Of a DNA stretch of 64,000 nucleotides, positions 24,811 to 55,481 are shown piece after piece. The notes beneath the pieces are model-generated. The model made no database searches, was not told the DNA's origin, and worked only from the letters and a program-made list of their open reading frames with translations. Position 1 is the stretch's first letter. Every line of letters begins with the position of its first letter. Made by a program: the position numbers and the translations under genes. The DNA comes from Epithemia pelagica (Eukaryota; Protista; Bacillariophyta), in the NCBI GenBank assembly GCA_946965045.2, contig OX337228.1, positions 5,456,001 to 5,520,000 on the forward strand, written 5' to 3'.

Positions 24811-26889
24811 CTAGGCAAAGGTGCCATTGTCGTTCGCATCATGATGGTCATGATCATCTTCTTCTTCTTCATCCTCGGGAACATCCACTTCATCATGATA
24901 CATGGTCAAAGTTTCAGCATTGTCTCGGTATGATGTCACCGGTCGTTCGCCCATGACAATACCATCTTCGTCATCATGGCCCGGTACCAACTGGCGTCGT
25001 CGTTTGAGCGACGATCGACTCGAGGAGGAGCAACAACACGAGACAAAGGTGACCGTAAAGAGCATTCCCAGGACAAAACTAGCAATGGCCACGGCACCCA
25101 CTGCCCATTGTCCACCACTGGTTTTCAAAATTTCTTGAGCCTCCTTGACATGATCATTAAAGGTGGCCGGTGTGGGATGTTGCAAGGTACAGTCGCGTTC
25201 CATCATGGGAGTGGTCAAATCAATCAAAATGTCCAAATCGCAAAACTGTTCCGGTGCGGCGGGGCACCCATCAATGCGTGGTGTCCAGACTTGGCCATTG
25301 TACAAGAGTCGAAAGGCATGACTGGTGGGGTAGACGGATGTATCCGTGTTGCCTCCAAAGTTTACTTCGTGTAGTTCCAATATCATCATGGACGCATACG
25401 AAGGCCACCAATCACTGATTTTCCAGGCACCCAAACTTGCCAAGAGAGGCAACAGAGTGGTATCGTGTCCACTAAAGAGAGCAAACTTGGCCGGTGTCGG
25501 ATCGCCCTCAGTGACACCCCGCGTGGCTGCCTTGAAATGATACATAATTTCATCCCATAGTGGTCCCATGGCAACTTTGGAAAATTCACCGTCATTGGCG
25601 GTGGCCAGCATGTTGTAGGGCATGGCATCGTGCTGGGCCAATCGACGAAATATGTGATCGCCATAATCTTTGGTCTCGTCACCACTGCCATCACCACTGC
25701 CTGGACTACTGGACGGCACCGTCGTCTCGGAGGAAAAGTAAAAATTGTCTTGTCCCAAATCTTCGCCTTGATAATCATTGACCGCGTCCGGCAAGTCTCG
25801 ATCGGTGCACATGGTAGTCATGAGACAATCCACGGTTGCAGTTCCTCCTTCCAAGACTTGTTTCTTAAAGTCTTGTACTAATTGTACTTGCGGCGATTGC
25901 AGAAAGGCTTGATATTCTTGTGATTTGTGATACCGATCTTGAATTTCCTTGAGTCGAGGACAAATGTCGAGATTGGCACCCAAAACGTCTCGTTCGCGAT
26001 CCGCCACGTGCAAGGGGAGAATGGGATGTCGATGAGACGACTTGAGATTCTTGTGTAGTCCATCCAATTCATCTTGAAACATTCCTCGCAATACAATTTG
26101 ACCAGACATGAGAGTTCGTTGATCGTCGTCGGATCGATAATAAATACTCGAGGCCAAGGCATTGTCACCATTTCGAAACAATGTGGAGGAATCCAAGAGA
26201 CGAAGACGACGATCGTGACTGTAATCTTTGTCACCATGATATACATAGGCATTGCGCAAAAAGTTTCCATTTTGCAATTCTTGATCATATCCCTGCAACA
26301 ACAATTGTCCATGTTGACAGGTTCCACCCCACGAATTGGTCAAATTACGTTCCGGATCCTGGAGGGCCGTATATTCCTTGTTCATCCAAAACATGCCACC
26401 ATGTTCTTGTTCATTGCGTGGTGGTGTTCCAATCCAGGTCGTCAAGTCACAATTCCAAATGGGTTTGTAGCCTGGCCAACACGTGGAATTGTACGAGGGG
26501 ATATTCCAGGGCGTTCGAGCACCATGACGAACCAAAGCCGTCACATGCAACAATCGAGAATCACCGGCCTTGGAGGTTTCCGGTAAGGGTGGAATGGATC
26601 GCAAGGCCATTTGGTCTGGTGTGGCACAATAATCCGGATACACTGGATACTTGGTGTACCATTCCGTAGTAGTAGTAGAAGAAGAAGAAGCATCGCTGGC
26701 ATCTCGTCGTCGTCCTGGATGGTGTCGTTCGGCTGCCTCGGCTGGTGATTGATCCGTTTGTAACAATGAGGAGGAGGAGGAAGACGATTCACTCCCCATA
26801 CCACTGACTGAAGCCATGGCGCCAGGCAAACACCAACATGATGATATCAACCACCATATCATGCAGAGAATTGTGGACTGGCTCTTCAT
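24811..26889 (-). CDS. Histidine acid phosphatase (branch 2), predicted type I membrane protein
   Basis: Catalytic RHGARTP and SGHDTT motifs. Hydrophobic N-terminal signal after MKSQ (start taken at 26889), C-terminal TM segment (WAVGAVAIASFVLGMLFTVTFV) and acidic tail. Confidence 0.9.
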   Translation of the reverse strand: MKSQSTILCMIWWLISSCWCLPGAMASVSGMGSESSSSSSSLLQTDQSPAEAAERHHPGRRRDASDASSSSTTTTEWYTKYPVYPDYCATPDQMALRSIPPLPETSKAGDSRLLHVTALVRHGARTPWNIPSYNSTCWPGYKPIWNCDLTTWIGTPPRNEQEHGGMFWMNKEYTALQDPERNLTNSWGGTCQHGQLLLQGYDQELQNGNFLRNAYVYHGDKDYSHDRRLRLLDSSTLFRNGDNALASSIYYRSDDDQRTLMSGQIVLRGMFQDELDGLHKNLKSSHRHPILPLHVADRERDVLGANLDICPRLKEIQDRYHKSQEYQAFLQSPQVQLVQDFKKQVLEGGTATVDCLMTTMCTDRDLPDAVNDYQGEDLGQDNFYFSSETTVPSSSPGSGDGSGDETKDYGDHIFRRLAQHDAMPYNMLATANDGEFSKVAMGPLWDEIMYHFKAATRGVTEGDPTPAKFALFSGHDTTLLPLLASLGAWKISDWWPSYASMMILELHEVNFGGNTDTSVYPTSHAFRLLYNGQVWTPRIDGCPAAPEQFCDLDILIDLTTPMMERDCTLQHPTPATFNDHVKEAQEILKTSGGQWAVGAVAIASFVLGMLFTVTFVSCCCSSSSRSSLKRRRQLVPGHDDEDGIVMGERPVTSYRDNAETLTMYHDEVDVPEDEEEEDDHDHHDANDNGTFA

Positions 26890-27169
26890 CCTTGTACAGA
26901 AGACGAGAATCCATGGAATGAACAAAACGTCGAACCACAATGCCAAAGATCGCTGGAACAAATGAATGACCGCCCCAAACACGGAGCGGGATTGAAATGA
27001 GCCTAAGGCGACTGGAATAAGTCAAAAGCGACTGAATCTCTACGGAAAAATTTGGACCGCACGATGCCATCAGATGCCAACACGTATTTCCTTCCATTGC
27101 ATCCATCACCAACCCGTCTTCATCTTCTGTATACAAGAGAAGCTTATAACATTCTTGAAGTGTGAGATC

Positions 27170-28207
27170 ATGAGATCTGCATTCATATCACGGTGTCGTT
27201 ACATACCAAAGTATTGGATCCGTTCTCCAGGAGGAGGAGGAACGTCCACTCAACATGGATGGTTCAGGTCCGGAACAAGTGCGGTTCTCGACGTACAACC
27301 ATGCAACCAACAAACACATGCATGCCATGCTGTCCCTTGCCGGAGTTTTTCTTCGAAGCCACAGAATTCAAAAAAGTCTACCAACGAAAAAGAAGATGAA
27401 GCCGCATCATCTTCTGTTTCGTATTCGGAAACCAACGACCCGGCTGATCCAGCCTATTTTCGACATGCGGGAATCCTCTTTCATGACAAGGCCATTTCTT
27501 CGCACTTGTTTCCCGACAATTCCGTCATTAAGCGGCCCTTGAATGACGGAGATCCCATTGATCCCAACCGTCGGTTGCCGGTGGAATTCGAATATGGATC
27601 CTTTTGGATGATCAAAGAAATGCGAGTTACCGATGACAAACCCGTACGAACCAACCCAGACCTCATTCCACAAACCTTGGCACAGCCCCTACCTCCATTG
27701 ACTGTCACATCCTTGGCCAGCGATGGGAATGAGGAGATTGTCCTTCCCGATCATTTGATTCAACAAAATAGATCCAACGACCCGGCGGCACAATGTACCG
27801 TCCTAGCGCTCAGTTGTCGACAATACGGCTTTTCCTTTATACCCTCCTGGATCGATCCCATTCGTGAACGATATGGCAACAACATTCGCGTCCAAACGAT
27901 TGTTCTCAACGTTTCCGAAGGCGGTTTCCTCCTTCGAACCTTGTCACCCCTCTTGAAATGGATGGTTCGTATGAATACCAGCGAGGCGGAACGACCCTAC
28001 ACCTACATGCACTATGGAAATGAAGCAGCCTTTAAGGACTTTCAAATACACTTGGGATGTCACAATGTCATGACGTGCTTTGTCTACCTCCTGGATGGAT
28101 TGGGCAATGTCCGATGGGCTGCATCGGGGGCGGCCGAACCTGAGGAACTGCAAGACTTGTTGGACAAGCACATTCCACAACTGTTACCCAAAACAAAACT
28201 AAAATAA
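27170..28207 (+). CDS. ATP10: Mitochondrial ATPase assembly factor ATP10-like
   Basis: Mitochondrial-type presequence (MRSAFISRCRY...RSFSS) and C-terminal FVYLLDGLGNVRWAASGAAEPEE matching the ATP10 pattern. Confidence 0.8.
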   Translation: MRSAFISRCRYIPKYWIRSPGGGGTSTQHGWFRSGTSAVLDVQPCNQQTHACHAVPCRSFSSKPQNSKKSTNEKEDEAASSSVSYSETNDPADPAYFRHAGILFHDKAISSHLFPDNSVIKRPLNDGDPIDPNRRLPVEFEYGSFWMIKEMRVTDDKPVRTNPDLIPQTLAQPLPPLTVTSLASDGNEEIVLPDHLIQQNRSNDPAAQCTVLALSCRQYGFSFIPSWIDPIRERYGNNIRVQTIVLNVSEGGFLLRTLSPLLKWMVRMNTSEAERPYTYMHYGNEAAFKDFQIHLGCHNVMTCFVYLLDGLGNVRWAASGAAEPEELQDLLDKHIPQLLPKTKLK

Positions 28208-28391: not shown

Positions 28392-30085
28392 TCAATGATC
28401 AAACTCTTTCATGAGCTCCAAGGCACGATCCAGTTCGTCGGGTGTAATGTCACTGACGCAAATGCTTTCACCAATGTCCGTAATAAGGGGAATCCTCTGT
28501 TCGCCATGACGATGTTCGACGGCATCCTTGCAACTTTGCCAGGCCAGTTCCGACTGCAAATCCGGCGAGTTGGTGGGAAGTTTCAAGACCTTCATGCAGG
28601 CAAAGATGCGTTTCAACGTATCCATGGTGATGTAGGCACGTTGGTAACTCAAGACACAGCAAAAGAAACCATCCACGTTGACGGCTTCGCCGTGCATAAT
28701 GTCGGCTCCCGGAACCATCTCGAGAAGTTTGGAAAATGTGTGACCATAATCCACGCATCGTTCCAGCTTCTTTTCCCAAAGATTGGGGCCAAGTTCTTCC
28801 AGCATGATTTGAATCGACAAGTCAATAATTCGAGAACCAACTTCCTTCAACGATTCCGAATCTGGCGAAAACTTGGATTTGACAAGACTTTCACCGTGCG
28901 TCTCCAGCAATTCAAAAAGATCCACCGAACGGACCAATGCCAACTTGACAATTTCTCCCAAACCATTGCAAATATTTCGTTCGCACTGAGTTGAGATAAA
29001 GGCAGTGTCCAGCACGCACGACGACGGAGCGTAAAAAGACCCAACCCTGTTCTTGTATGTCTCTCCCGTCAAGCCACAGCAATAGTCAACTCCATTCTTG
29101 ACTCCAACACTAGCGTCCACAATTGCCAAAAGGGTAGTCGGGACACGTACAAAGGGAACACCTCTTCGGTAGAGGCAGGCTCCCATTCCGGCAATGTCCA
29201 AGACAACGCCCCCGCCAATGGCCAGAAAGGGTTCGCGTCGACGGAGCTTGTAGGCGCACAATGCGTCCAAGAGCGTGTCCACTGCGGCGGGACGCTTGTC
29301 AGCCTCGCCTCCGTCCAAAACACAGGTTGTCAATTCAATGCCATTCGCCTCAAAGTATTGAAGAATCTTGTCTCCATAAAGTTCTTGGATTGCCGAATCC
29401 AGCACGGCAAACCGACGATTGTACCCTTCCGGATGGACACCCGTCGACTCCAAGAGTTGAGGGTTCATTGGGTCAAACAAGGTACCATGTGGAATGATGT
29501 TGACATCATACGATATGGGGAGATCAAACACATTTCTCCAACCACGCGTCCTCGACACAACCGTTGTTTTGGTGGTGACCAATGCGCCCGGCGTCTTGTC
29601 GACCTGAGTTTTTTCTTGTGTCAAGGTTTTAGTGAAACTGAAAACATTTTGCGGCGCCCGTTCAAGAGGCTTGAGGATTGTCGTCATTCCATCGCCATTG
29701 TTTTCTTCTATAATAGGTTCGGCGGTTTCGGTTTTGTCGTCGTCGGAACTTGATGACGTAGTTGCAAATGTTGCCGTCGACTCAAAACTCTTGAGCTCAG
29801 CTGCAGATTTCTCAAACGCAACCAATGCTCCTCTCACATCCTTGGGTAGCATCTTCCACGAGCTGAGTACCTTCGAAGAGAGTACGCCTGTTGCCGAATT
29901 CCCATCTGAGATGGAGACTTCTTTGCTACATGACAAATAGCCGCAAGCGTGAGGATTGTAATTTCCCAAGTTCAACAAATGGGAGTTAAGTGCATTTACC
30001 TCAACGAAGAAATAGCAAGTTCGGTCGATCCGAGATCTTTCTCTGTTGTCATTTCCTCAATGGTGGGCGACATGGTTGACTCCAT
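28392..30085 (-). CDS. EEVS: Sedoheptulose-7-phosphate cyclase, 2-epi-5-epi-valiolone synthase (EEVS) type, 2 exons, ~539 aa
   Basis: DHQS-fold motifs GGGVVLDIAG and PTTLLAIVDASVGVKNG, plus EEVS-type MLEELGPNLWE..LERCVDYGH and HGEAV. Exon 1 (30085-30000) reads MESTMSPTIEE. Intron 29999-29926 (gtaaat...tgtag). Confidence 0.88.
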
Positions 30086-31066
30086 CTTGTTCTACTTCCG
30101 ATTATGTGTTATGCTTCTTACGTTTGCCTCTGTTGCCTCCAATGAACTCTTTTCCAAAAAAGTGAGGGCGCGTGGGCTTGAATGATGTATGAGAACTTGA
30201 AACAGGGGGGGAGCCAAATCCTTAGCCCTTTCAGTGTGTTTGTATATTGGTCACATTATTTGTGATTAGAGCATCTCACTGCTGGAGTGTACTAGAGAAT
30301 GCTTTTGGTGCTTTTGGTATCTTGACACGTCAGCAGGTGGTACGCATGCCCAAACGTCATTGAAATCGAAATGATGTCATGGAAAAGCATTCGACGTTTG
30401 ACCCATCATTTTGGCTTCTTCCTCATCATCATCCTCCTCGTGGTCCTTGGCATGTCGCCGGTCCTCGATCTCTGGACCATATCTTCTTTGCTTGTTCAAC
30501 AAGCAACGGTGCATTTCATAGAAGATGACAAGGCGCGAGGAATTGGATTTTCAGATGCGATTGCAATGTGTGCATGATCGACAGCGTCCTCTATAGGTGG
30601 ACATTTTGAAAACGACGGAACTTGAGGCATGGGGATCCTTTCCGTGGGGGATGCGGTGCATTCGTGTCCAGAGCACGGCGACTTCTCACTCCACGTCGAC
30701 TTCAAGGAAATTCAAATCTGCACATCAACGACACGTGGCACGTTTGTCCTCTCTTTGGTGGACTAACAAAATGGTAGCAAGGATGGTAGCCTGATCGCTT
30801 CTTCTTGTCTTAGGAAAAGAGAACAGGCACGAGGGAAGACCGTCGTATCCTATGAGCATGCGGAGAGGAGAAAGAAGTGTACAAATAGCACATTTGCTAC
30901 GGTTGTTTTGTTTGGCATGAAACATCAATTTGACTGAAAGGCTAAGAGCAAGGTCATCGGGGAAGAAATTCATAGCCTACGACCTCGCGAAGAGGAGCGT
31001 GAAGTGTGCAAGTAATCATCAACACACGTCCATTGAAAATACAGAACGTTAAAGTTTGTCTAAACA

Positions 31067-34000
31067 TTAAATTTCTTGGCTCCCTCGTTCAAAGACCATT
31101 GCTTTCCGAAGTAGCTGACTAACATCAATGTGCGCCCGATCTCGAGTGCTGACATCAATATGATACGCAGCCACTAGGCTGGCGAATTGGACTGCCGATT
31201 CCAGATTCAACGATTTGTTGGTCATGTGTGCGCTCAACTGTTCCTCCGAAAAGGCAGCGGGCTGATGACTCCCGGAAAATGAAACGTTCGAGTCGAGTGC
31301 CTCCATGTGATCCATGACCATCATGGACATTTCATTGCCTTCTTCTTCACCATTCTCCTCCAGAGCCTTGCGTTCGTACATGGATTTGACTTCATCTGTC
31401 TCGCTCTCCCACATTTCGTGACACATGGAGAAAATAGCTTTTTTGTCGTCATTGCACTGCTGCTTCAATGTCACATAGTTTTCGCGCATATACAGAGTGT
31501 AGGGTGACATCTTCTTCTTTCCCCGCCGCTCATTGGCCGGCTCAGGCTTGTTCCTCCGATGAGTGTCCTCAGAAGAAGGAACAACTCCTGCAGGGGAACT
31601 CTCCATGGCCATTCCTGTATGTCGCAGCAAGGTCGCGACTAACAGGCCCGATGTGAAGGCATCGCCTGCACCGTTTCCATTAATGATCGTGCCCGGTGGA
31701 AGTTCGACACTACTGACGCGAGCCGTCCTGTCGATCCATGCCTCTGGCAGCATTTCAGACCGTAGGAACCGAGCTTTGTTGTTGCAGGAAACAAAACTTC
31801 CTTTCTTCCCCCTTGTGACCGCAACCACAGCTACACCACATTTCAGAAATAGGTTGGCAGCTTGCGCAAGCGCCATCTCGTCGTTTGGGCTATCGTCCAA
31901 TTGACAACCTGTCAGCAAAACTAGCTCCTCTTGATTCAGGTGAAGAATGTCCACTTGATCGAGGGCCGCTCCCAGTACAGGATCATTTCGTATTTCCGAG
32001 GCGGATCGTAGCCTTCCCTGAAACAAGTCTTCTGGTACACCATTCAAATCGAGAGCAATGATTCCGCCATCAATCATGACACTCCGGGCCTCTAAGAATA
32101 CTTGAAGCAGTTTCTCGCCTTGGATCATGGGAAGCAAGTGAGGATAACCAAACAAGAACGCTCCACATATTGGGGACATCTGTTCCAAATCTGCATGATA
32201 ATTGTCGAGGTCATCAGCAGACAAATGCGAAAAGTCTAGAGACGGCCCGGATGATGCTGCCGTCATGGCGGTAAGCATTTCAACAACCTCAACTGGCGTG
32301 AAATCGGTATTTCCAGCTGCATCAAAGAAGCACCCTCTTCGTCCATCGTCGTAAATGGGAAGGACTGCCAAAGCAGTTCTTGAATCTTTGTTCTTTCCTC
32401 TAGCGGACTTGATCAATTTTGTGTTGACGTTACGACACGATGTGCCGCATTCTTCCAGCAGAGCAATCAGTTTGTCTCCTGTTCCGTCGTTACCAACCTT
32501 GCATATGGGCACAACAGAGTGGACCACAGGAGGAGTCACTAGCATGTATTCGTCATCTAGCGGTGCGCCATGACAAAGACGTGCCAGCGTTTTGCATGCC
32601 ATCGAAACGCTTCCTCCACCACAGCTTCGTTCACCTTTGAAGGACTCAATGCTCTCACCACCTCCTCCAGTAGCATGGAACAGCTGCATATCCACACATG
32701 CAAGACCAGCACAAACAATCGCCGCATTATGGGGAATGGCCCATTGCGTAGTTTTCTCGTCAGGTCGGATTCGAACACGTTTCTTCGAGGAAGATTTCTC
32801 GTGCTTACTCAAGCGAGCCTGATGTGCCAAAACGACCTGTTGATCCAGCTCTTGCATTTGTCTGAAAAACCCTGGATCGACACCTTTGGCAGCACCCTCT
32901 GGCACTTTAAACAAATAGGACAGTGCCTTAGCAACTTTATCGTATGGCCAACTGCGACCTGAGAAGTAGTCACACCATACGGCTCCATCGATCATTAAAG
33001 GAACACAAAGAACAGAATCCGAAGCTCTCGTGTACGTTACCATCGTGTGAGGTTGTCCCAAAAAGCCCAAGCTAGTGTACTCCACAAAATCCCGTTTGTC
33101 ATCGTTAATGAACTCCGTGAACATGATGGATACTTTGTGATCCAATTGATCTTCTTGCCAGGGGGCAAAAATATTGTGCTTGACACGAAGCTTTGCGTCG
33201 GCGGCAGTCTTGGCAGATGCCAAATTGCGCATATCGTTATTTCCTAAATGATTGCTCGAGGCCACAACACGAGGCAAGAGCCCCATTGTTCGGATGTATT
33301 CAAGTGCAGCGGTTTTGAATTTTGTTTGGCCTGCCTTGAAATCGGTTCCAAGGCAGTATACTCCAAGTTGTTGTGTCGCCAAATCTGCCAAGCCTGGACA
33401 TGATACCGTGTTTTGACTTCCACCGTTGATAAAGGAACACCCCTCCAGCAGTGCTGCAGTTGCATATAAAATAGAAGGTGGGATTGGGCCGCCGCGTTGG
33501 TCTTCGTCGAGTTCGATTGCCTCGAGCAGTTCATTTGCTGTCTTGAGCTCAAGGATAAGACCGCAGTTTGGTTCAACACTGGCGGACCAGATCACCTGAC
33601 CAAGGTGTAACACGAAGTTAGACCAAGAGAAAGGCAACTGACAAACACCTCAGTAGAATGTTTTACACTCTGAAAACACTTACAGTCGTGTGTCCCACGA
33701 CACCGTTCCGCCATTTAAAATATCGAATGTCGGCCCGCAAACACTTAAGCTTTTCGGAATCAGTCGAAGCTTCTGATTTTCCCAAAAAGTGTGTTGCTGT
33801 TTCATGCTGGGATGCCCCAATGAATCGAGGATCATACACGCCACGAAAGACTTTCACCTTGTTCATTTCATCTCGAACTTGTCGAACCAAATCATAATCA
33901 AGAATTTGTTGCTGGAACAAGGCGTCACCGGGCTTTGTCGGACGAATATCCTGTCAATCAATCAAAGAAAGAAAATGAGCAACCCGACACGACCGTGGCA

Positions 34001-34576
34001 AAAGACAACATTTCGCAACATCGAGTGTCGTTGGCAAAGCGATGAATGACGTACCCATCCACCAATCGCAGCCATGGAAGCATCTGCGAGGCCTTTGACT
34101 TTGTCACGATACCCGACTCCTCCATGGTCGCCTTTTTGATCAAGTTGCGTAATACAACCGAAATAATTCGCCGTCATGGATTCTCCCTTGGGCCCATACC
34201 ACGATAAACCGAGACGATTGGCCAAGACACCGGCGAGCAAGGTCGTTCCATTGGCTCCACCCAAGCCAATCACCAAAACACCAAAGCTTCCTAATGTCTT
34301 GGGTTTGTGCTTGACATCCTTCACCAGAACAGGTTGTGGAGCTTGCGGTGTAGGGACCATAAATGGCCCATTGGGTTGGTGTCGATACGATGACGCCATA
34401 CTGTAGACACTCGTGACATCGGATGACGCATCTGTCATGGACTGTGAGAATCCTGAAGAGGATCCAGTGGATCCAGCCGACGGTGATCGAAAGCCAGGAT
34501 TTTCCACATTGCCCCTGTCACTTCCCACACCAGTGTCTCGAGGATTTGGTTTCAACCGTGCTGAAGGCTTCGACAT
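31067..34576 (-). CDS. Fusion protein: divergent myo-inositol-phosphate synthase (INO1/MIPS) + PfkB carbohydrate kinase + HMG-box-like insert; 3 exons, ~1105 aa
   Basis: MIPS motifs [51 protein letters not shown]. PfkB motifs [40 protein letters not shown]-like [11 protein letters not shown]...[21 protein letters not shown]. Introns 34054-33951 and 33683-33596 join three ORFs in frame (GGW|DIRP and GHTT|VIWS). Confidence 0.9.
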
Positions 34577-37372: not shown

Positions 37373-39563
37373 TTACGTCTCAGTGTTGGGTAGTCGTAGA
37401 ACTCGCTCCAGACGCAAGCAAATGTCCTGCAGTGACTCACTGTCCGATGCTTTCTGTTGTTGGTTTTGACGATCTTGTAGAGACCGCGAGCATCGATCAT
37501 GGTTCATGACAATCCATTGACGATACTTGGATATTTGATCTGCGCGGAGTACTCCCACCAACGTGCGTTCTTCGCGATGAGACGCTTGGCGGCAAACAAA
37601 ATCCATGGCATCGCGCAAGCTCGAAGCAGCTTTGGTGGCAGCCACACTTTTGCTCCAGGACGTTTGTGCATTCGTCGTCTGCGCGAGCTTTTTGTGTAAT
37701 GCCAAAAACTTGTCTTCTTGGTCTACGCTGAACTTATGTTCATGACAAAAGAGTGGCCACATTCGAGCTGCATCATCTGCAGGGCATGTTCGAGCTGCCG
37801 ACGATTCGTCCGATTTTGCCAGTTTGTGGTTTGGGTCGGCGGTGTTCATTAGCTCTTCCCCTACTTGTTTGGAACTGATTTTACCCGACGAGGATCGAAC
37901 AATCGCCTTGTCAGGATCACGTTTGTTGTATTCCTCCTTGCCCGCAGTAAAGTAGGTATCCTCGTTCAACGTGAGCCACAACCATAGTTTTTGATATCTA
38001 GGCAACAGATTGGACTGAAGTGCATTGAACTGGAACTCAATCACTGCCTGGAAGATGGGACTGCTCGGACCCGTGTCACGAACAGCTGTCATGATTGACG
38101 CGGCATCGAGTGTTTCTTGGTCCAGGAACTGGGAGATCCGCATACTTCGTTGTCTCCGCAGTCCAGGAACAAGTTTGTCAATTTGATTTTGCCGTTCCTT
38201 GGCAATCTTCTGATGGGTTCTCCACACACGGGCTTCGGCGGCCGCCAACCGTTCCTTTTTTCGACGTCGTGAAATACGAGCACTTTCTCGATTTCGTTCC
38301 AAACGCTTGGCCCGTTTTTCTTCCGACTCTTCCGGTGCAGGGTTTTTACCCTGTTGGAGAGCAGCAGCAGCCGCTACTGCCGCATGACCATAAAAGGCCA
38401 TGTGCGGAAAGGCTGTAAACGGAAGACCAAGCTGTGCTACTTGTTGGATTTGCTGCCCTTCTTGAGCAGATGGCTGTGTCGTCGACGACGCTGTTGGCTG
38501 TTGCTGTGGTTGTTGCGGCAAGATGGGTTGATGTGGAGGTTGCTGTGTGGATGATGAGGAGGATCCTTGTGCTTTGGCCATGGCGTTGATTCCTCGAATC
38601 CATGCCAGGTGTTGTTCATGCGAATTCGGAGTGGAACCCATGCCATTCTCTATCGCACCCGAAGGAGCCAAGGTTGCTGCTGTAGGAGTGTTGGTAAAGG
38701 GATGATAGGACGAACCAAGAAGGGCCGGGGAAGGAATGCCATGTGTCGACGGAGGAGGTAGCATGAGATTTTCGGGCGTCCCAATCATGGCGGCCGGTGA
38801 CACGGGTGAGACTCCTGCTTGACGAGTTTGCTGTTGTTGCTGTAACTGTGATTGGTGCGCCGCAACCATCATGGAGGCAAACATTTGCTGTTGTTGTTGT
38901 TGCCTCATTTGTTGCAACACCATGGGTCCACCCGAAACCAAGGTATTGGCCATTGTGGATAAGGACGATGAGGAAGAACTGGCACTGCTAGGTATTGCCG
39001 AATGTGGTGGGTGGGATGATGACGATGATCCAAACAAGAGAGGATTCAAATGATGATGATGAGATGACAGTTTGCTGAGATCATTCGCCATGAATCGATC
39101 GTCAGTAGTAGTGGTGGAGTAGGATCGCGAACTAAACTGTGGCACTCGAGGTGTGGGAGGAGCCATTGGTTCATCGTCCGCATTATTCACGTTTTCGTCA
39201 TCCTCTTCATCACTATTTGTTAAACCAAGTCCAACATTTTGTTGTTCCCGAGGAGCCGCTTGGCTATCCGAGGGAGCCTCCAAAAGTTGTGGCACGACAA
39301 AGCCAGAACTCATGGGGATATCGGACGAGGATGAGACCGGATCCTCCGATTCCGTTGTGTTGGAGTAATCCGTTTGGCAGAAATCAGGTACAGGAGCCTG
39401 TGATTGCGTTTCACTCCCTCCGAGAAAATAAGACAGCATGTGATCTGAACCAAAGAACACACACAAGTTCATGCCGTACATGTTTCTTGAGTTTTTTTAC
39501 ATCTCTGGCTCCGAAAGCATACTGCTGCTCTCATAGACTCACCTGTTTCGCTATCCCAAACAT
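37373..39563 (-). CDS. bZIP-type transcription factor with poly-Q/S N-terminus
   Basis: Basic region EEKRAKRLERNRESARISRRRKKERL. Likely short first exon MFGIAKQ (39563-39543) and intron 39542-39398 (gtgagt...cacag), in frame with APVPDF. Confidence 0.85.
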
Positions 39564-40060: not shown

Positions 40061-41614
40061 ATGTTCGACCCATCGCTCTCGTGGCTCCGACTTTCCTTTG
40101 TCGATTCGGTGCGGTTTCCCTTTAATTACACGTTTATAGATAAGGTCGACGACATTCAAGACCATGAGGATGGAGAAGAAGGACGGAGTAAAATTCTCAG
40201 CGAAGTTTCGGCCTGTCGATTTGTCAACGACAGTGAGCAAGGCAAGAACCATAACGACAAAGACAACAACAACTCATTGCATTATCGACTGTTGTTGGTC
40301 GGTGATTCGGGGGAAGTCTTTACCGCACAAGTGACCTTGTGGAGAATCAATACAGAAGCTGGAAAAGAAACTTTACGCTTCAACATTACTCTTGAAAGGC
40401 AACGACCACTCCTTCTTCCTGGATACAACGTCAATCAAGGTGCCACCGACATGGCATCAACAACGCCGGTTTCATCTCGTTCGGTGGATGCTGAAGGATG
40501 CGAAGTTTTTGACACATGGCCTCACGCCATGTTGGTGAGTTCGGAACATCCCTTGGCCCTCACATGGTTTGATCCACACACAGGGTGGGCAGCCACTACA
40601 AACAACGTGTCTCAGTCTCCGCTGCCTCAGTATAGGATTCCCACACACATTGCCCAGAAAACAAGACCCAACAAGGGTTTCGAGGCGGTCACGGCATGGT
40701 CCAGTCCACGAATGCCGACCGTTGTAGAAAAGGAAGAGGAGGAGGGGGTGGACAACCGTTCCTATTTGGCGCCTTCCTATGTGCTGACGACAACCGAGGG
40801 ACACTTGCGAGATGATCCACCAGGCTTTCATCGATGGCTCTTGTGGAAGACAGACAAAGGAGGGGATCCCATTCTCGAAATGGGACATTGGGCGTCTCGC
40901 TGGAAAGGGAAACTTGTAGGAGATAATCATGAGTTCCTCTCGATCACGGACTTGACCTACTGGCCAGAACAAGAGCTTCTCTTGGTCCTCGAACGAGGAT
41001 ATGATGGAGAAACTAACATGATCAGCCTTTCTTCCGTCGACATGACCTTTCCAATGAGTCGCCCTTCCCAGTCACTCTTGAATTGGACACTGGATACCAT
41101 GTTTTTGGCATCGTCGGCACAAGAATCGATTCAACTCCCCGTGGACAATTACGAATCGCTCTGTCTATTACCCTCGAGTGCGACTCAGAACAACCCCAAG
41201 GAACGACTCGTTCTCTTGGTCAATGATGAAAATCACAATCCCCAACAAATTGGCACCCAATTTGTGTTGTTGCGACTCCATGTAGAGGAGGTTGATGATG
41301 GTAGTCTGAGCAAACAGCATTGCTTGGCAACACGATCCACCCTCTCCTCCTCGTCTTTGGTTCTCGTTCCGGTCTTGTTGGTACTGGGAGGATTGGTTCT
41401 TGTCGCTGTGTTCCAATACTGCCGCAGAATGCGTGATTATGGAAGTAGTTCGCGTGGACAATATAAAGTCACCACCAATGCATCAACCCCGAAACTACCA
41501 CTGGACCAGTATGATGGAAGCGAGGACAACATTCACAACGATCCAGAAGAAGAAGAAGAAGAAGAAGAAGAAGAAGAAGAAGAGGACAGTGATCAAGAGC
41601 ACGGTCTTTCATAA
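40061..41614 (+). CDS. Phytase-like esterase family protein (beta-propeller type) with C-terminal TM and poly-Glu
   Basis: NKGFEAVT, ITDL, LLLVLERGY, DNYESL and LLVNDENHNPQQIGTQF resemble the 'esterase-like activity of phytase' family. TM segment LVLVPVLLVLGGLVLVAVF. True N-terminus unclear. Confidence 0.7.
   Translation: MFDPSLSWLRLSFVDSVRFPFNYTFIDKVDDIQDHEDGEEGRSKILSEVSACRFVNDSEQGKNHNDKDNNNSLHYRLLLVGDSGEVFTAQVTLWRINTEAGKETLRFNITLERQRPLLLPGYNVNQGATDMASTTPVSSRSVDAEGCEVFDTWPHAMLVSSEHPLALTWFDPHTGWAATTNNVSQSPLPQYRIPTHIAQKTRPNKGFEAVTAWSSPRMPTVVEKEEEEGVDNRSYLAPSYVLTTTEGHLRDDPPGFHRWLLWKTDKGGDPILEMGHWASRWKGKLVGDNHEFLSITDLTYWPEQELLLVLERGYDGETNMISLSSVDMTFPMSRPSQSLLNWTLDTMFLASSAQESIQLPVDNYESLCLLPSSATQNNPKERLVLLVNDENHNPQQIGTQFVLLRLHVEEVDDGSLSKQHCLATRSTLSSSSLVLVPVLLVLGGLVLVAVFQYCRRMRDYGSSSRGQYKVTTNASTPKLPLDQYDGSEDNIHNDPEEEEEEEEEEEEEDSDQEHGLS
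41546..41581 (+). repeat. (GAA)12 microsatellite encoding poly-Glu
   Basis: Perfect gaa run directly visible; the following gag gives 13 Glu. Confidence 0.95.
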
Positions 41615-41778: not shown

Positions 41779-44700
41779 TCACACACCTTCAGATGCACCT
41801 TCTGCAACTTGCAGTTCCAGCTCCATCAACAATTTGTTTGTAACCTTGATCTGAAGCGCACACGCAATCAGAATATCCGGACTCAATAGGGTTGCATCTG
41901 GGAAGGTATTCAGATAACTCATCATGCCATCCAGCTCGTGATTCAGAAGGATTGGCTGACTCAAAAACAGGATTGCTGTGGCAACGCGGAAGAATATCTT
42001 GAAGCTCCGTTCTACTAGCCAAATGTCCCACATATGGGAAACAGTGGCAGTCGGCATGGACGGAAGGTACAAGAACAGTGTTTGGAACCACCCCAACGCG
42101 AAGAGTCCAACATTCAGTTCGTGGTGTTCGAAATGGTCAGCAAGTACCGGCAATTTGATTTGAATCAACTTTTCAAAAACTAAGCAACACGTTTTCAAAC
42201 ACCTGAGCTCTGGCCAGTAAAAGTGACCAAGATTGTACGCAGTGAAAAAAATATCCATCATTCGAAAACAAGATTCCTCAACCACCAGACTTCCGTCGAT
42301 CTTCGCAAGAATTTCTGCGACCTCATCATCCGATGTTGTAGGCTTTATTTCGACGTCCGGTGCCAACTGAATTACGCCTGGGAGTCTCTTGTAGGCAACT
42401 CCCCATCGAACAGTCTCCTGCATCAGTCGCAGCAAATGTGCAACAACGTAGTCCATCCCCTGGCAATAGCCAACTTCAGGATGCGCTGCCGCTAAGGCAT
42501 GAAGAACGAAGCTCAGTTTTTCTTGTAGAATTGCCTTCGTCGCTTCAGTTAGAGCGTTTCCACTTAGAGCCATCTCGTCATTTACTTTCGCTCCAATGAC
42601 CACTTCTGGGCCTTTCTTCTCCGCGTCCAACTCAAAAGACATGTTTGCAAACGATCCAACTGGGGTGACACCTCCCCAGTCACTGACAGTATCTGTGGGT
42701 GCTAAACTGACGCTGTCACTATCATCATGTTCATCCTGTGAAGGATCTCTTGACGGGGGTGGAGGATTACCGGTGCCTTTGACACCTCGCTTTAGCGTCC
42801 GGCTCTTACCCCAAGTGACCAGAGCGCGAACAATTGAATCAGTTCTCAGGCGAGCTCCCGTTTTGTGAGGCGGAAGATTTCCAAACGATCGAGAAACATC
42901 ACGTTCAATCACCTGGTGCCATTTTCCCGTTCTCCCTTTACGTTCTAGACGTTCCAACTCGGTGCTTTCACCTTCTGCTGCGCATGCCCTGAGGTCACGA
43001 GAAGCCTCACTAAACTGTTCCATTGCTACCCATATCCAGAAAGCCGGTCTCATCCTCATACTAATCCCTCCGAGTCTTACAGCTTGCTGTATCAAATCAT
43101 GCATGTGTTCTTCAACGAAACTACGACATTGTCGATTGACAGCCTTGACCTTGCAAACTGCAGCTGGGTCTCCAAGAAAGCTCAGTATTGTACCAAGGAC
43201 CCGTGGGGAAACACCGATACATTTTTCAAATGGGCTGGGATGTCCTGGAGGGAAAATAAGAGTTTTCTCTACTCGCGTTTTTGCGCGAGGTGTTTTCTCT
43301 TCCTGATGGAAATGTAAATCTTTGCCTTGAACCGAATCTCTTGGCGGCGACTGCGCAGATACTGCCAGAGGAAGCTCTGCTTCTTCTTTCAAGGGAAGAG
43401 AGGGAAAAGGACTTCCGTAGAATCTTTCAGCAGCGACGGAAATGGCTTTATCGATCTTCTCGGCCATCTTTTCATCATGAAGAATCTTGGATGTTGACGC
43501 TGGAAGATGATCCTCGCCCAAAGGATGGTTCTCTCTCAAGTCCACATGCGCCATCATAGCGGAAGGGCTGGCGGTTTCGTCAGTGGAGACATGACGAGGA
43601 GTAAGAGGCTGATCTTCGGACTCAATAAGCACATCACTTGATTTTTTCTTCATGGTGTCATACTCCTCCCGGCAAGAAGAAGAAGGGGTACCAACTGGGG
43701 GATCCGGAATCATTGGAAGTGCATTCGTCGGCAACTCCATCTGGTAAGTCCCACCCGAAAGAATATCGTTGACTCTGTCACTTTCATCGTCCACTCCATG
43801 AAGCAAAGAACCGTACTTAGCGGACAATTTAGACAAAGCTGCCTGAGATGAAAAAGATTCGCCAATTGCGTTGGCCTCAATTTCGGTGGAGCCTATGGAA
43901 TGATTCTCCTGGGATGTTTCCGAATTGCAAGTTGCGAGAACAGCTTTGTCGCAAATGGAATTCTTGTATGGATCATTGGTCGAGGGCTCAGTTTGTTCCC
44001 CGGGCACGATGTCAACCTCCACTGGACCATATGAATGACTCTCGACGTCGCTTCTCGCGATTGCTTTAGTGGTCGTATCAGAAGTTATTTGGGGACCGCT
44101 TTCCTCTTCGTGTACAGATATTGTGGGAACTTGCTGTTCGTCGGTTTCATCTTTGCTTTCTAGTAATTCTCCATGCAACTCACCGCCATCGCCCTTGCTC
44201 CTACTTCCACCATAAGTTTCGACATTCGGTTCTTTCTCCAAATGGTTAATCCCTAGATCAATATCACCACTTCCACCTGAGTGGCGAACCCTTAAATTGG
44301 TCGAACCTGGCTCATTGTGAAACCCATTCACACCACTGTCATAACTACCAGATGCATTACCCGTGTCGATGTCTCCAATAGCGTCTGCAGCATGCAAACC
44401 ACTAGATGAAAGAGCAAAAGTGGTTTGTGTTGTATTTGTCTCATGTGGCTGCATGGGCAAATTGTTCTCCTCTTCGACATCGTCCACTTCCGCCATCATT
44501 GGTTCAAGCGATTCTTCTGCGTCGGGGTTTGATTGTAAAGACTGAGTTTGTGAGGAACTCTTAACAAGATCGAGACTTGCTTCGTCCACAACTTCTGGCG
44601 TAGATTGTTCAAGATTTTCTTCTACGTTAGGATCCGATGGCAAAGACTGAGTTTGTGAGGAACGTTTGACAATAACGATGCTTGAATCTGAGATTGCATC

Positions 44701-47700
44701 GTCCACAATTTCTGCTGTTGAAGGTTCAAGATATTCTTCTATGTTGGAGTTGGATTCCAAGGGTTGTGTTTGTGAGGAGCTCTTAACAATATCGAGGCAT
44801 GACTCTGAGATCGCATCGCCCTCTATTTCCACCGTCGATGGATCAAGAGATTCTTCCACGTTGGACCTTGATTCCAAAGGCTGAGTTTGTGTCGAACTCT
44901 TTATAATATCGAGACATGAATTTGATTTCCAAGTAGGCGTCGTCTCAATGTGATGATGAGGGTCTTTATCATCTGAGAGTTGGTGGCAGAGATGAGCCCT
45001 ATGTGCGTCAGATAAGGCGGGTGTTTCTCCCATTGAGCTTTCGACGGCAGTGGCAGAATCAAGGAGTGCATCACCATGTAGCATCGCAACCGAAACCGAG
45101 GGTGAATGAGATTCTGTGTCCACGTTCTTCAACATTACTTCACTGTCAGAATTGATTGCGCTTGCTCTGTCATTGTCGTTTTTATCAATGACGGATAGGA
45201 TTTCTTGTGACCTCAATCCGGTGTCGGAAGTGGATTCGTGCAAACGGTTATCCTCAGGTATATGACCTGGCACGACGTTGCATGTAGCGTCGAAAATCGC
45301 GGAAGCCGTGCTCGGAACTTCTGTCGTATCGACACGAGCATCGTGAAAAGGTTCATGTAATAGTGCTGTAGAGCTCGAGGCAGTGTGGTTAGAACTCAAA
45401 CTTTCCAACTTTTCTGTGCCCGATCCATCTTTACCGACGACATGATGTGCGTTTGACGTGTCACCGAAACCATCGTCGTCTCTGTTATTGATAACCTTTC
45501 TTTCTCCAGAGGTGCCATCACTTGAATTTGTCGTTATTGTGTCAAGGAGCTTGTCGACATCTTCGTTTTCAGCTTCTTCACTTAAGATGGTCGGGATAGA
45601 GGAAAGAACGCGTTCAATGTCCGATTCTGACGTAACCATCCCAAGATTCACAGTATTCATTGGTGAGCAAGGCGGAGAACTCTTATTTTCTGGCCTTAAG
45701 TCTTCGGCACCAATCTCCACGACTGACTCTGACTGGACGCCCGTTTTGTTGACAACAGATTCCACCGAACAAATCATAGTATCTCTCGTTATCCTTGACA
45801 TAGCACCATCAGGTGAGAGAGGAATGAGTTTGTCCACTGCAGTGTGATCCAATGCATCTTTCTCTGGTTGTGGTTCGCCACAACTGTCAGCACTACTGCG
45901 GGCATCGACGAGTGCTGGTGCATCCGCTGTGCAGTATTCTTTTCCCTTCAAAGTTGGGGAATCTTCGTTTCCATTTCGGTCTGTCTCTATCACCGGAAAA
46001 CATGGTGGTTCCGTGGGCATATATTCCTTCTCTTCGGATTTCGCATCGGCTATATCAACCTCGTCACCAACAGCAGACGGCTTAACTTCACTAGAAAGAG
46101 GGGATTCGTCCCCGCACTGCGAAGAATCATATTTCGGTTCAATCTCATCGGGTCGTTCAGACAAATCAACCATTCCACTGGTTTCTTGCGATTCAGCTTG
46201 TGCGTCCATGTCATCACTAGTAGCTTCCAGTGGGTTAAGCCCAGAATCTGTTTCCATCTCGACACGGTTGTTTGCCAATGGCTCGTGACTACTTTTCCTA
46301 GAAGCACTTTGCTGCTCATCGTTGATATGGACTGCCGTGGAGGATTCAACGGCGAGTTCCTCTCCCTTGAACTCAGAATCACTTGTCGAAGTGATATCGA
46401 CTTCAAGGCTTACAGTAACATTTCCCTTTTGTTTTGTAGGACCACATGGAAACTTGTGACTGTCATTTTTGTTTGTCTTTTCCATAGTCTCGGACAAGCT
46501 AGAATCATGTGGAATCCAAGCTGATGAAAAATGATTTTCTTGAGCATGAGCCAGCGCCGTGGCGGAGCCATCATTATTCTCAACTCCATCCATCTCTTCT
46601 CCAGTCAATTCACCTTGCTGTGCTAGAATATTGTCAAAGTACATCGTGTTGTGGAAAGGAGGATTGGATGTAATTGCGTGATAACCCCCGTTAGACTCTG
46701 ACACAGGTGGGTTAACATTTGAATCGATGTCTGCTTCAAGTTCTCCGGAGTCTCTCTGCGAGAGAACGACATCGTCCTCTCTTCTCGGAACGATGCCACT
46801 TTCCGTACTACCAAGGGACATAACATTCAAACCCATGTTTTCAGCTGAAAACAAGTGCCCAGGTAAGGCCTCTGCTGGGCCGCCCATGTCTTTTTCATCC
46901 TCGGATTCGTCACTCGAGCTCCAGTAAGATAAATTCTCCGACGCCCCAGTCACTCTTATATGACGTGTTGACACAATGTCATCGGTAATAGTGTAGCTCT
47001 CTTGAGTATTTGATGATTCAACAGCAGGATCATGTGCCAGGACCAATTCTTCGGATGGTGTATCGGCCGCCGTACGGTTTGATGATACACTCTGTTGAAG
47101 ACTGTCCTGATATTGCCCCGTTATCTCTCTTGATAAGCCAGTATCTGATGGGTCAGGCTCACTGCCGTTTGAAACAGTGCAAGCTTCAGCGTCACCCTGA
47201 CAAATCAGAGTTCCTTTGTCGGGTTCCGCCATTGAGCCCTCTGCGTTGGAAGTCAACTCCTCATAATCGGAAGCATGGTCAGCGTTGACGGGTGAGTTAT
47301 TGTCATTCACATTAAGAGTTTCCAAAAATGTCGAATCGTTTGCCGAGAGAACATTGATATTGTCGCTTTTAGTTGTGATTTCTGGTGCTGATGAGACATC
47401 CGTAGTACTATCCCGGATATGGTATTGCTCTGCATGTACGTCTGCGACGGCACCAGCAGCGACGGATGGGATATCCGTGATGAGTTTATCTGAAGTTATA
47501 GAAGTTGGATCATCAACTATGTTTCTCATCGTGCTGTGAGATAACGCGACAGTTGGCACTTGGTGTTCCACCGTCGATGATTCATCGATTTTCCCGAGCA
47601 ATCGCTCTCCTTTTCCCATTTTGGTATCCCCTCTCTTGTAGTTTGGACCACGAGATGAATGTGAGCGCTGAGAAGACCTTGATTTTTTCTTTTTCTTTTT

Positions 47701-55395: not shown

Positions 55396-55481
55396 GGTAC
55401 GATGGTGCTGAACGGCTGCAGGGTGCAGCACCACAGGGATCTTTATTTTTATTTTATGGTTCTATGTAGTGGTTTGTGGTG

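What the first reader, a model, noticed from the sequence alone, without database searches (positions are those of the whole stretch)
28392..34576. Two unrelated cyclitol synthases side by side (EEVS + MIPS-kinase fusion): candidate eukaryotic cyclitol locus
Seen: an EEVS-type cyclase gene starts ~980 bp downstream of the stop of a MIPS-PfkB fusion, same strand, with no convincing gene between. Established: both enzyme families are NAD+-dependent sugar-phosphate cyclases (glucose-6-P to inositol-3-P; sedoheptulose-7-P to 2-epi-5-epi-valiolone) with unrelated folds. Bacterial C7-cyclitol pathways (validamycin, acarbose) pair EEVS with a cyclitol kinase. Inference: the locus may be a compact cyclitol/osmolyte or C7-cyclitol pathway in which the fused kinase phosphorylates a cyclitol made by one of the two cyclases. 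I know of no described EEVS + MIPS-kinase arrangement, but could not search for one.
Basis: partly seen in the sequence, partly recalled or inferred. Interest (0 to 1): 0.82.

Follow-up and report, generated by a model that had tools for sequence, protein, structure and literature searches.

The report
Diatom EEVS beside MIPS-kinase fusion gene
Two real, expressed diatom genes for unrelated sugar-phosphate cyclases (an EEVS-type cyclase and an inositol-phosphate synthase fused to a sugar kinase) do lie about 1 kb apart here, but this tight pairing holds only in Epithemia-like diatoms, so a shared cyclitol pathway is possible but unproven.

Summary
On the minus strand lie a 1105-aa, three-exon MIPS + PfkB kinase fusion (31067-34576) and, 981 bp downstream, a 539-aa, two-exon EEVS-type cyclase (28392-30085). 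Spliced contigs of one public run show both are expressed, as separate transcripts.

The cyclase scores higher against ValA (EEVS) than against DDGS or DHQS. It carries the Asp and His that separate EEVS from DDGS.

Both genes are conserved across diatoms and already sit in public databases, as "inositol-3-phosphate synthase" and "3-dehydroquinate synthase".

Tandem adjacency occurs only in three Epithemia-like genomes. Elsewhere the two genes are:
- 13 kb apart in one diatom;
- about 60 kb apart in another;
- on different contigs in Mayamaea and Seminavis;
- not within 10 kb in Nitzschia, Fistulifera and Cyclotella.

Unrelated neighbours (acid phosphatase, ATP10, bZIP, RabGAP) are kept at least as well. 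One 2.6-kb marine contig from a more distant alga holds the pair head-to-head, so linkage is not random.

The kinase subfamily is found fused only to MIPS, which ties it to inositol rather than to the EEVS product.

Verdict: a real neighbourhood with a weakly supported pathway reading. The scan had noted both genes and the HMG-box before, on this same stretch only.

The parts
28392..30085 (-). EEVS-type sedoheptulose-7-phosphate cyclase gene, 539 aa. Exon 1 is 30085-30000, the intron 29999-29926, exon 2 29925-28392.
   Evidence: Pfam PF01761 + PF24621. Best solved relative is ValA 4p53 at 281 bits, against DDGS 5tpr at 218 and DHQS at 121 or less. The spliced contig of run X4 skips 29926-29999. 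The frame was checked. 65-87% identical to the orthologues listed in pennate and centric diatoms.
30086..31066 (-). Spacer. It holds the fusion's 3' UTR (31066-30429) and a stretch of about 350 bp without transcript (30428-30082), the presumed EEVS promoter.
   Evidence: Contig pieces of run X4 (table 8). No family hit for ORF 30725-30973.
30327..30359 (-). Two TGACGT motifs 27 bp apart in the presumed EEVS promoter. The block is conserved in Epithemia clementina.
   Evidence: 27 sites in 64 kb, so two within 33 bp is locally dense. This was seen post hoc and is only a lead.
31067..34576 (-). MIPS-PfkB(HMG) fusion gene, 1105 aa. Exon 1 is 34576-34055, intron 34054-33951, exon 2 33950-33684, intron 33683-33596, exon 3 33595-31067.
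   Evidence: One spliced X4 contig covers 30429 to beyond 34391 with both introns removed. Same length as the E. clementina orthologue P0002 (1105 aa, 87% identity over the 856-aa exon-3 ORF used as query).
32837..34276 (-). MIPS (inositol-3-phosphate synthase-like) domain, about aa 101-516, interrupted by the two introns.
   Evidence: PF07994 and PF01658. 176-213 bits to eukaryotic MIPS structures 9m53, 9f2k, 1vko and 1jkf. Most catalytic positions are kept, with Ser-to-Ala in the KSGQTK loop and a 3-residue gap at the yeast K369 region.
31135..32722 (-). PfkB/ribokinase-fold kinase domain.
   Evidence: PF00294. AlphaFold model with pLDDT 82 and pTM 0.75. Foldseek top hits are ribokinases and YdjH, with TM by target about 0.7. 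The NxxE and GAGD motifs are invariant in 24 relatives.
31352..31519 (-). HMG-box-like three-helix insert between the GAGD motif and the last helices of the kinase domain.
   Evidence: PF00505, E 4e-6. Also found in the Epithemia, Mayamaea and Nitzschia orthologues. Three helices flanked by low-confidence linkers in the model. Conserved in 10 diatom fusions.
24811..26982 (-). Context: histidine acid phosphatase (His_Phos_2) with signal peptide, RHGxRxP and HD motifs, a C-terminal membrane anchor and an acidic tail.
   Evidence: It is the most conserved neighbour of the fusion in raphid pennates.
27074..28207 (+). Context: ATP10 (mitochondrial ATP synthase assembly factor) between EEVS and the phosphatase.
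   Evidence: PF05176. Also lies within 10 kb of the fusion in Mayamaea, L006, L024 and L036.
37373..39481 (-). Context: bZIP-like gene upstream of the fusion, syntenic in other pennates.
   Evidence: Weak Pfam hit. tblastn matches next to the fusion in L002, L003, L004, L025, L029, L036 and L083.

Best explanation
These are two independent, separately transcribed, conserved diatom genes. They are immediate neighbours only in the Epithemia lineage (Surirellales), as one state of a slowly rearranging neighbourhood that also carries unrelated genes.

Gene A is a single polypeptide. Its divergent eukaryotic-type MIPS domain most likely cyclises glucose-6-phosphate to inositol-3-phosphate with NAD+. 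Its ribokinase-fold domain most likely phosphorylates myo-inositol or an inositol monophosphate, by analogy with the PfkB-type myo-inositol kinases of plants and archaea (that analogy is from memory). This would feed inositol phosphate or phosphoinositide supply.

Gene B is an EEVS-type cyclase. It most likely converts sedoheptulose-7-phosphate to 2-epi-5-epi-valiolone or a close C7 cyclitol in the cytosol, for a gadusol/mycosporine-like or still unknown diatom cyclitol.

Shown here: the gene models, expression, domain identities, conservation and the synteny pattern. Inferred: substrates, products and the lack of a shared pathway.
For: - Domains and closest structures.
- EEVS versus DDGS sites, read from the alignment: the query has Asp in VDYGH (ValA LVDFGH, DDGS VIAYGH) and His in VEHRHG (ValA VKHRDG, DDGS LTRDG). 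Both are invariant in 12 diatoms.
- Separate spliced transcript contigs with a gap between them.
- Both genes are conserved across the diatoms listed.
- Tandem adjacency occurs only in the window, E. clementina and ERZ25042306.
- The genes are 13 kb apart in SRR12687343 and share a 122-kb scaffold at more than 10 kb in DRIS22.
- They are on different contigs in Mayamaea and Seminavis.
- No EEVS within 10 kb of the fusion in Nitzschia inconspicua or Fistulifera, and no fusion within 10 kb of the EEVS in Cyclotella.
- Functionally unrelated neighbours (secretory acid phosphatase, ATP10, bZIP, RabGAP) are kept at least as often.
- The kinase subfamily is fused only to MIPS.
- Diatoms carry several DHQS-family genes, so this one need not serve the shikimate pathway (PMC3901274).
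Against: - Linkage is more than random. There are three raphid lineages at 1 kb, 13 kb and about 60 kb.
- L054, a 2.6-kb marine contig from a more distant alga, has an EEVS-like gene and a fusion-clade MIPS head-to-head across an AT-rich spacer of about 1 kb. Keeping or regaining this pair in distant lineages hints at co-regulation.
- The MIPS domain is only about 35-40% identical to canonical eukaryotic MIPS and has an altered K369 region, so its substrate could differ.
- The diatom cyclase has Lys where ValA and DDGS have Pro (GHTFSK against GHSFSP and GHTWSP), so its product could differ from EEV.
- No expression series was available.
Confidence: 0.6

Rival explanations
1. One reading: a compact two-cyclase cyclitol module. 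The genes are co-regulated, and the fused PfkB kinase phosphorylates a cyclitol made by EEVS (as AcbM and ValC do in bacteria) or by MIPS, yielding an osmolyte or C7-cyclitol phosphate.
For: Tandem adjacency in three Epithemia-like genomes. Residual linkage in two other diatoms. An independent head-to-head pair in L054, from a non-diatom-like alga. Both enzymes are NAD+-dependent sugar-phosphate cyclases. Diatoms are reported to accumulate a cyclitol osmolyte of unknown biosynthesis, cyclohexanetetrol (PMC5334607).
Against: The genes are on different contigs or more than 10 kb apart in Mayamaea, Seminavis, Nitzschia, Fistulifera and Cyclotella. No EEVS is seen in the short flanks available beside the Phaeothamnion fusion. 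Transcript contigs are separate, with 11-fold different contig depth in the one RNA-like run (depth is a poor measure). Unrelated genes share the same microsynteny. The kinase subfamily is tied to MIPS by fusion, never to a DHQS-like domain. The kinase is ribokinase-fold, not glucokinase/ROK-like.
Confidence: 0.25
2. The cyclase is simply the diatom 3-dehydroquinate synthase of the shikimate pathway, as the databases name it.
For: Automatic names in JGI, NCBI and UniRef. Sub-threshold NCBIfam aroB match of 199 bits against a cut-off of 305.
Against: It scores 281 bits to ValA but 121 or less to any DHQS structure. It has Asp at the DHQS Asn268 position (numbering from memory; the ValA-type Asp) and the other EEVS-type site. 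It has no plastid-type signal peptide at the conserved N-terminus. Diatoms have at least three DHQS-annotated genes.
Confidence: 0.04
3. The MIPS domain has taken on a new function and is not an inositol-3-phosphate synthase. The fusion would then make and phosphorylate a different carbocycle.
For: Only 176-213 bits to canonical MIPS over the whole domain. Ser-to-Ala in the phosphate loop, a 3-residue gap at yeast K369, and Lys403-to-Met (yeast residue numbers partly from memory and checked by counting in the alignment). I could not establish whether diatoms also hold a canonical, unfused MIPS.
Against: Equivalents of D320, N350, N354, D356, K373, K412, D438 and K489 are present, and the four classic MIPS motifs are recognisable. 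The Aureococcus member of this clade is annotated as its inositol-3-phosphate synthase.
Confidence: 0.12

Closest known systems
[quoted passage not shown]
   Same: Best solved relative (281 bits, aligned over residues 128-527). Same metal-ligand Glu/His/His motifs. Same Asp and His at the two sites that separate EEVS from DDGS (PMC4426668).
   Different: About 130 extra N-terminal residues, partly conserved among diatoms. Lys instead of Pro in the GH(S/T)FSP motif. No MT-Ox gene and no validamycin-type partner genes were found among the window ORFs scanned. Activity is untested.
Eukaryotic myo-inositol-3-phosphate synthase (yeast Ino1 1jkf, plant 9m53, C. elegans 1vko)
   Same: Same two Pfam domains, the same motif set (GWDI, SASVEP for TANTER, NGGSQNT, NHLGNND), and most catalytic Lys/Asp/Asn residues kept.
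   Different: Much more divergent than is usual among canonical MIPS. Fused at the C-terminus to a kinase. Altered K369 region and Ser323-to-Ala.
PfkB/ribokinase-family sugar kinases, including the PfkB-type myo-inositol kinases of plants and Thermococcus (the latter from memory)
   Same: Full ribokinase fold. NxxE and GAGD catalytic motifs.
   Different: A narrow algal subfamily: only 230 representatives at E<=0.001 among 1.84 billion. It is either fused to MIPS or standalone (Porphyridium, Discosporangium). It carries an HMG-box insert in diatoms. No specific similarity to any kinase of known substrate.
Bacterial C7-cyclitol clusters (validamycin, acarbose) pairing EEVS with a cyclitol kinase
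   Same: An EEVS-type gene lies next to a gene that encodes a sugar-type kinase.
   Different: The kinase belongs to a different fold family. The cluster is not conserved across relatives. The genes are monocistronic eukaryotic genes. None of the other pathway genes is present.
Algal EEVS + MT-Ox gene pairs (Aureococcus, Coccomyxa, Chromochloris)
   Same: Eukaryotic algal EEVS sitting in a small gene neighbourhood (PMC4426668; PMC7826186).
   Different: The neighbour here is a MIPS-kinase fusion, not a methyltransferase-oxidoreductase or an ATP-grasp enzyme.

Membership tests
EEVS (sedoheptulose-7-phosphate cyclase, sugar phosphate cyclase superfamily) | DHQS-like two-domain architecture | tested here: met
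   PF01761 (E 2.5e-30) and PF24621 (E 5e-20).
EEVS (sedoheptulose-7-phosphate cyclase, sugar phosphate cyclase superfamily) | Closer to a characterised EEVS than to DDGS, DHQS or DOIS | tested here: met
   ValA 281 bits, DDGS 218, DHQS 121 or less, DOIS 82. The Atlas's nearest clusters are named sedoheptulose 7-phosphate cyclase.
EEVS (sedoheptulose-7-phosphate cyclase, sugar phosphate cyclase superfamily) | The two fingerprint residues that separate EEVS from DDGS (ValA Asp281 and His360; numbering from memory of Kean 2014, which is not held) | tested here: met
   Query has Asp and His, ValA has Asp and His, DDGS has Ala and Thr at the aligned columns. Invariant in 12 diatom orthologues.
EEVS (sedoheptulose-7-phosphate cyclase, sugar phosphate cyclase superfamily) | All 14 active-site fingerprint residues as in ValA | tested here: inconclusive
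   The list of 14 could not be read because the papers are not held. One nearby site differs: Lys against Pro in GHTFSK/GHSFSP.
EEVS (sedoheptulose-7-phosphate cyclase, sugar phosphate cyclase superfamily) | Converts SH7P to 2-epi-5-epi-valiolone | not testable with these tools
   Needs an enzyme assay.
myo-Inositol-3-phosphate synthase | NAD_binding_5 + Inos-1-P_synth domains of eukaryotic type | tested here: met
   Best PDB hits are eukaryotic MIPS.
myo-Inositol-3-phosphate synthase | Full set of catalytic residues (yeast D320, S323, N350, N354, D356, K369, K373, K412, D438, K489) | tested here: inconclusive
   Eight are kept. S323 is Ala, and the K369 position falls in a 3-residue gap (on the 87%-identical orthologue P0002).
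PfkB/ribokinase-family kinase | Ribokinase fold with NxxE and GAGD motifs | tested here: met
   Model pLDDT 82. Foldseek E about 1e-16 to ribokinases. N274, E277 and G362-D365 are invariant.
PfkB/ribokinase-family kinase | Defined substrate (inositol, cyclitol or sugar) | not testable with these tools
   Neither sequence nor fold hits discriminate.
Conserved biosynthetic gene cluster (EEVS + kinase, validamycin/acarbose-like) | Clustering conserved in related genomes | tested here: not met
   Tight adjacency occurs only in the Epithemia clade and in L054. It is absent in at least six other lineages.
Conserved biosynthetic gene cluster (EEVS + kinase, validamycin/acarbose-like) | Kinase homologous to the cyclitol kinases ValC/AcbM | tested here: not met
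   The kinase is PfkB/ribokinase-fold. That ValC and AcbM are glucokinase/ROK-like is from memory.
Gadusol pathway pair (EEVS + MT-Ox) | Adjacent methyltransferase-oxidoreductase gene | tested here: not met
   No such domain in any ORF of 220 aa or more that was scanned in the window; the retrotransposon-like block at 55.4-62.8 kb was not scanned.

The most novel reading that the evidence does not exclude
EEVS and the MIPS-kinase fusion form an ancient, co-regulated two-cyclase cyclitol module of ochrophyte algae. It would have begun as a head-to-head pair sharing a promoter, as in L054. The ribokinase-fold domain would phosphorylate a C7 or C6 carbocycle, leading to a still unknown diatom cyclitol phosphate or osmolyte.
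Probability: 0.15. Interest if true: 0.8.

Novelty: new variant of a known kind. Interest (0 to 1): 0.45.

Why it matters
Diatoms are major primary producers, yet no C7-cyclitol pathway has been worked out in them in the literature I could search. An EEVS-type cyclase kept at 65-87% identity across the pennate and centric diatoms listed implies a conserved, unknown product. Candidates are a sunscreen, an antioxidant, an osmolyte or a signal.

The MIPS-ribokinase-fold fusion, with an HMG-box insert in diatoms, is an uncharacterised architecture for the first step of inositol metabolism. It could bear on how algae start lipid-independent inositol phosphate synthesis.

The neighbourhood offers a cheap hypothesis, shared regulation, that existing diatom genetics can test. 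As it stands, though, it is a lead and not a pathway.

Tried and rejected
- Bacterial genome scan with the diatom EEVS alignment. It returned only DHQS-like genes at 26-31% identity in PVC and SAR202 bacteria. None had a MIPS or a kinase of this subfamily nearby. This says nothing about true EEVS clusters.
- Kean 2014 and Osborn 2017, which hold the fingerprint lists and the eukaryotic distribution, are not held. The full 14-residue test could not be done.
- RNA runs: none is on record. One run of unknown kind (X4) turned out to hold spliced contigs. It confirms the gene models and expression but gives no co-expression.
- Fold search of the kinase and PDB or NCBIfam sequence searches gave only generic ribokinase-family matches, with no clue to substrate.
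- The histidine phosphatase neighbour as an inositol-polyphosphate phosphatase: rejected as specific support. It is a signal-peptide, membrane-anchored enzyme of the prostatic/lysosomal acid phosphatase type.
- Whether diatoms also hold a canonical, unfused MIPS could not be settled (one search was uninformative). I ran no further search on it, because fusion fragments would have filled the list.
- L054's organism could not be named. Its MIPS motif resembles that of Aureococcus, but its G+C content is 50%.
Full report
**What is there.** The window is diatom nuclear DNA. The closest public proteins come from Epithemia clementina (Surirellales), at 87% identity for both genes.

On the minus strand Pfam finds MIPS domains in three consecutive ORFs. 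The last ORF continues into a PfkB kinase with an HMG-box match. A DHQS-family ORF follows downstream.

One public run of unrecorded kind (X4) holds two spliced contigs on this stretch. The other three runs (X1-X3) hold unspliced contigs that read straight through the introns and spacer, so they are DNA.
- The first X4 contig covers 28440-29925 and 30000-30081, skipping 74 nt.
- The second covers 30429-33593, 33682-33949 and 34054 to beyond 34391, skipping 88 and 104 nt.

With the cuts placed at GT..AG, these give an open 539-aa cyclase (ATG at 30085) and an open 1105-aa fusion (ATG at 34576). The fusion has the same length as the E. clementina orthologue. About 640 bp of it is the fusion's 3' UTR, and about 350 bp (30082-30428) carries no transcript. 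The two genes are therefore expressed as separate transcripts.

**The cyclase.**
- Against solved structures it scores 281 bits to ValA (EEVS), 218 to Anabaena DDGS, 121 or less to DHQS and 82 to DOIS.
- At the two sites said to separate EEVS from DDGS (PMC4426668; residue identities from my memory of Kean 2014), the printed alignments show Asp in VDYGH (ValA LVDFGH, DDGS VIAYGH). They also show His in VEHRHG (ValA VKHRDG, DDGS LTRDG).
- Both residues are invariant in 12 pennate and centric diatoms. The whole catalytic core is 67-86% identical across them.
- One nearby position differs from both ValA and DDGS: Lys for Pro. The product is therefore probably, not certainly, 2-epi-5-epi-valiolone.
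- The conserved N-terminus (MT.K....SSS) is hydrophilic, with no signal peptide, so the enzyme is probably cytosolic.
- Diatom genomes hold at least three DHQS-annotated genes (PMC3901274), so this one need not serve the shikimate pathway.
- No MT-Ox-like or other cyclitol pathway gene was found among the window ORFs scanned.

**The fusion.** The MIPS domain is of eukaryotic type but divergent, at 176-213 bits to plant, fungal and animal MIPS. It keeps the equivalents of yeast D320, N350, N354, D356, K373, K412, D438 and K489. It has Ala for S323 and a 3-residue gap where K369 lies.

The C-terminal 560 residues fold as a complete ribokinase-type kinase (pLDDT 82; Foldseek E about 1e-16 to ribokinases and YdjH). 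The NxxE and GAGD motifs are invariant. A three-helix HMG-box-like insert sits between GAGD and the last helices. It is flanked by disordered linkers and conserved in all diatom fusions aligned.

The kinase subfamily is small: 230 representatives at E<=0.001 out of 1.84 billion. Its longer members are all MIPS fusions. These include diatoms, Phaeothamnion, unnamed metagenome proteins, and an Aureococcus protein annotated as inositol-3-phosphate synthase. Its short members are standalone kinases, for example in Porphyridium and Discosporangium. No member is fused to a DHQS-like domain. The fusion therefore ties the kinase to the MIPS reaction. The most economical reading is phosphorylation of inositol or of inositol monophosphate, and this is an inference.

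| Genome or contig | Position of EEVS relative to the fusion |
|---|---|
| Window, E. clementina (L001), ENA assembly ERZ25042306 (L007) | Fusion then EEVS in tandem, spacer 0.6-1.0 kb, followed by ATP10 and the acid phosphatase |
| Logan contig SRR12687343 | 13 kb upstream of the fusion, same strand, with roughly ten called genes between (Pirin, carrier, helicase, LRR and unnamed ORFs) |
| DRIS22 metagenome diatom | Same 122-kb scaffold in one assembly, more than 10 kb apart; about 60 kb by my reconstruction from the two assemblies |
| Mayamaea pseudoterrestris, Seminavis robusta | Different contigs |
| Nitzschia inconspicua, Fistulifera solaris | No EEVS within 10 kb of the fusion |
| Cyclotella cryptica | No fusion within 10 kb of the EEVS |
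| Phaeothamnion, and about eight metagenome contigs with several kb of flank | No EEVS beside the fusion |

By contrast, the histidine acid phosphatase lies next to the fusion, mostly head-to-head, in at least eight lineages. ATP10, a bZIP gene and a RabGAP giant also recur nearby.

The phosphatase has a signal peptide, a membrane anchor and an acidic tail, and resembles prostatic/lysosomal acid phosphatase. ATP10 is a mitochondrial assembly factor. Microsynteny at this locus therefore does not by itself imply shared function.

**The exception.** L054 is a 2.6-kb marine metagenome contig. It carries an EEVS-like N-terminal fragment with the motif GYRNVFNLPISYDV, which matches the diatom motif. 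The fragment is only about 36% identical overall to the diatom proteins. Head-to-head with it lies a fusion-clade MIPS that has more introns and an Aureococcus-like ADWGGC motif. An AT-rich spacer of about 1 kb separates the two.

This is an independent tight pairing, in a different orientation, probably outside the diatoms. It keeps a co-regulation hypothesis alive. The contig ends before the fingerprint residues of the cyclase and before any kinase domain, and its organism is unknown.

**Weighing.** Linkage of the two genes is more than random, but tight adjacency is clade-restricted. Unrelated genes share the block. The transcripts are separate. The kinase is bound by fusion to MIPS, not to EEVS.

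I put about 0.6 on independent functions with passive or weakly selected neighbourhood. I put about 0.25 on a functional or co-regulated cyclitol module. The specific idea that the kinase acts on the EEVS product gets less, about 0.1.

**Comparison with what is known.** Eukaryotic EEVS is described in vertebrates, and predicted EEVS genes beside MT-Ox have been reported in Aureococcus and green algae. The held literature describes no diatom EEVS, no MIPS-PfkB fusion and no pairing of the two. Two key papers are not held. Both proteins are in public databases under automatic names.

Diatoms are reported to hold low levels of MAAs, inducible by blue light and UV-A (PMC2866486). They are also reported to hold the cyclitol osmolyte cyclohexanetetrol (PMC5334607). 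Either could relate to these genes, and neither link has been tested.

**Earlier notes of this scan.** Notes on the same stretch (s1-235397, s1-235676, s1-235675) named the fusion, the EEVS start at 30085 and the HMG-box. All three were checked here and hold.

Noticed in passing
window 31352-31519 (-): An HMG-box-like three-helix module is inserted inside the ribokinase-fold domain, between the GAGD motif and the C-terminal helices. It is conserved in all diatom fusions aligned, and the shorter non-diatom fusions (788-857 aa) gave no HMG-box hit. Its role (DNA binding, lid or docking) is unknown.
   Followed up: partly
window 30327-30359 (-): Two TGACGT motifs lie 27 bp apart in the stretch of about 350 bp without transcript upstream of EEVS. 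The block is conserved in E. clementina, and the ERZ25042306 spacer has a TGACGTCA. From memory, TGACGT is the site bound by stramenopile bZIP/aureochrome factors, which would fit blue-light induction. This was seen post hoc.
   Followed up: partly
window 24811-26982 (-) and loci L002, L004, L024, L028, L033, L036, L052, L083: A membrane-anchored histidine acid phosphatase is the most conserved neighbour of the MIPS-kinase fusion in raphid pennate diatoms, usually head-to-head with a short spacer.
   Followed up: partly
L054:1-2608: A marine metagenome contig with an EEVS-like gene and a fusion-clade MIPS gene arranged divergently around an AT-rich spacer. It is probably from a non-diatom ochrophyte.
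   Followed up: partly
window 28392-29925 (-), motif GHTFSK: Diatom EEVS-type proteins have an invariant Lys where ValA and DDGS have Pro, three residues after the metal-binding His. This is a possible change in the active site.
   Followed up: no
L056:200-2524: In a non-diatom contig, a UbiE-type methyltransferase and an unknown 391-aa gene lie just upstream of a MIPS-PfkB fusion.
   Followed up: no
window 30382 and 28518-33770: Runs X2-X4 differ from the window by about 15 single-base changes. X2 and X3 also carry a 19-bp insertion in the EEVS promoter region; X4 has no contig there. These are allelic or strain variants.
   Followed up: no
window 40061-41614 (+) and 41779-52392 (-): A Phytase-like (PF13449) ORF and a 3537-aa RabGAP-TBC giant lie beyond the bZIP gene. 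The RabGAP is syntenic with Mayamaea and the DRIS22 diatom.
   Followed up: no
window 55400-63000: A G+C-rich block (56-58% against 47% elsewhere) with strong GC skew and long overlapping ORFs. It was not examined here.
   Followed up: no
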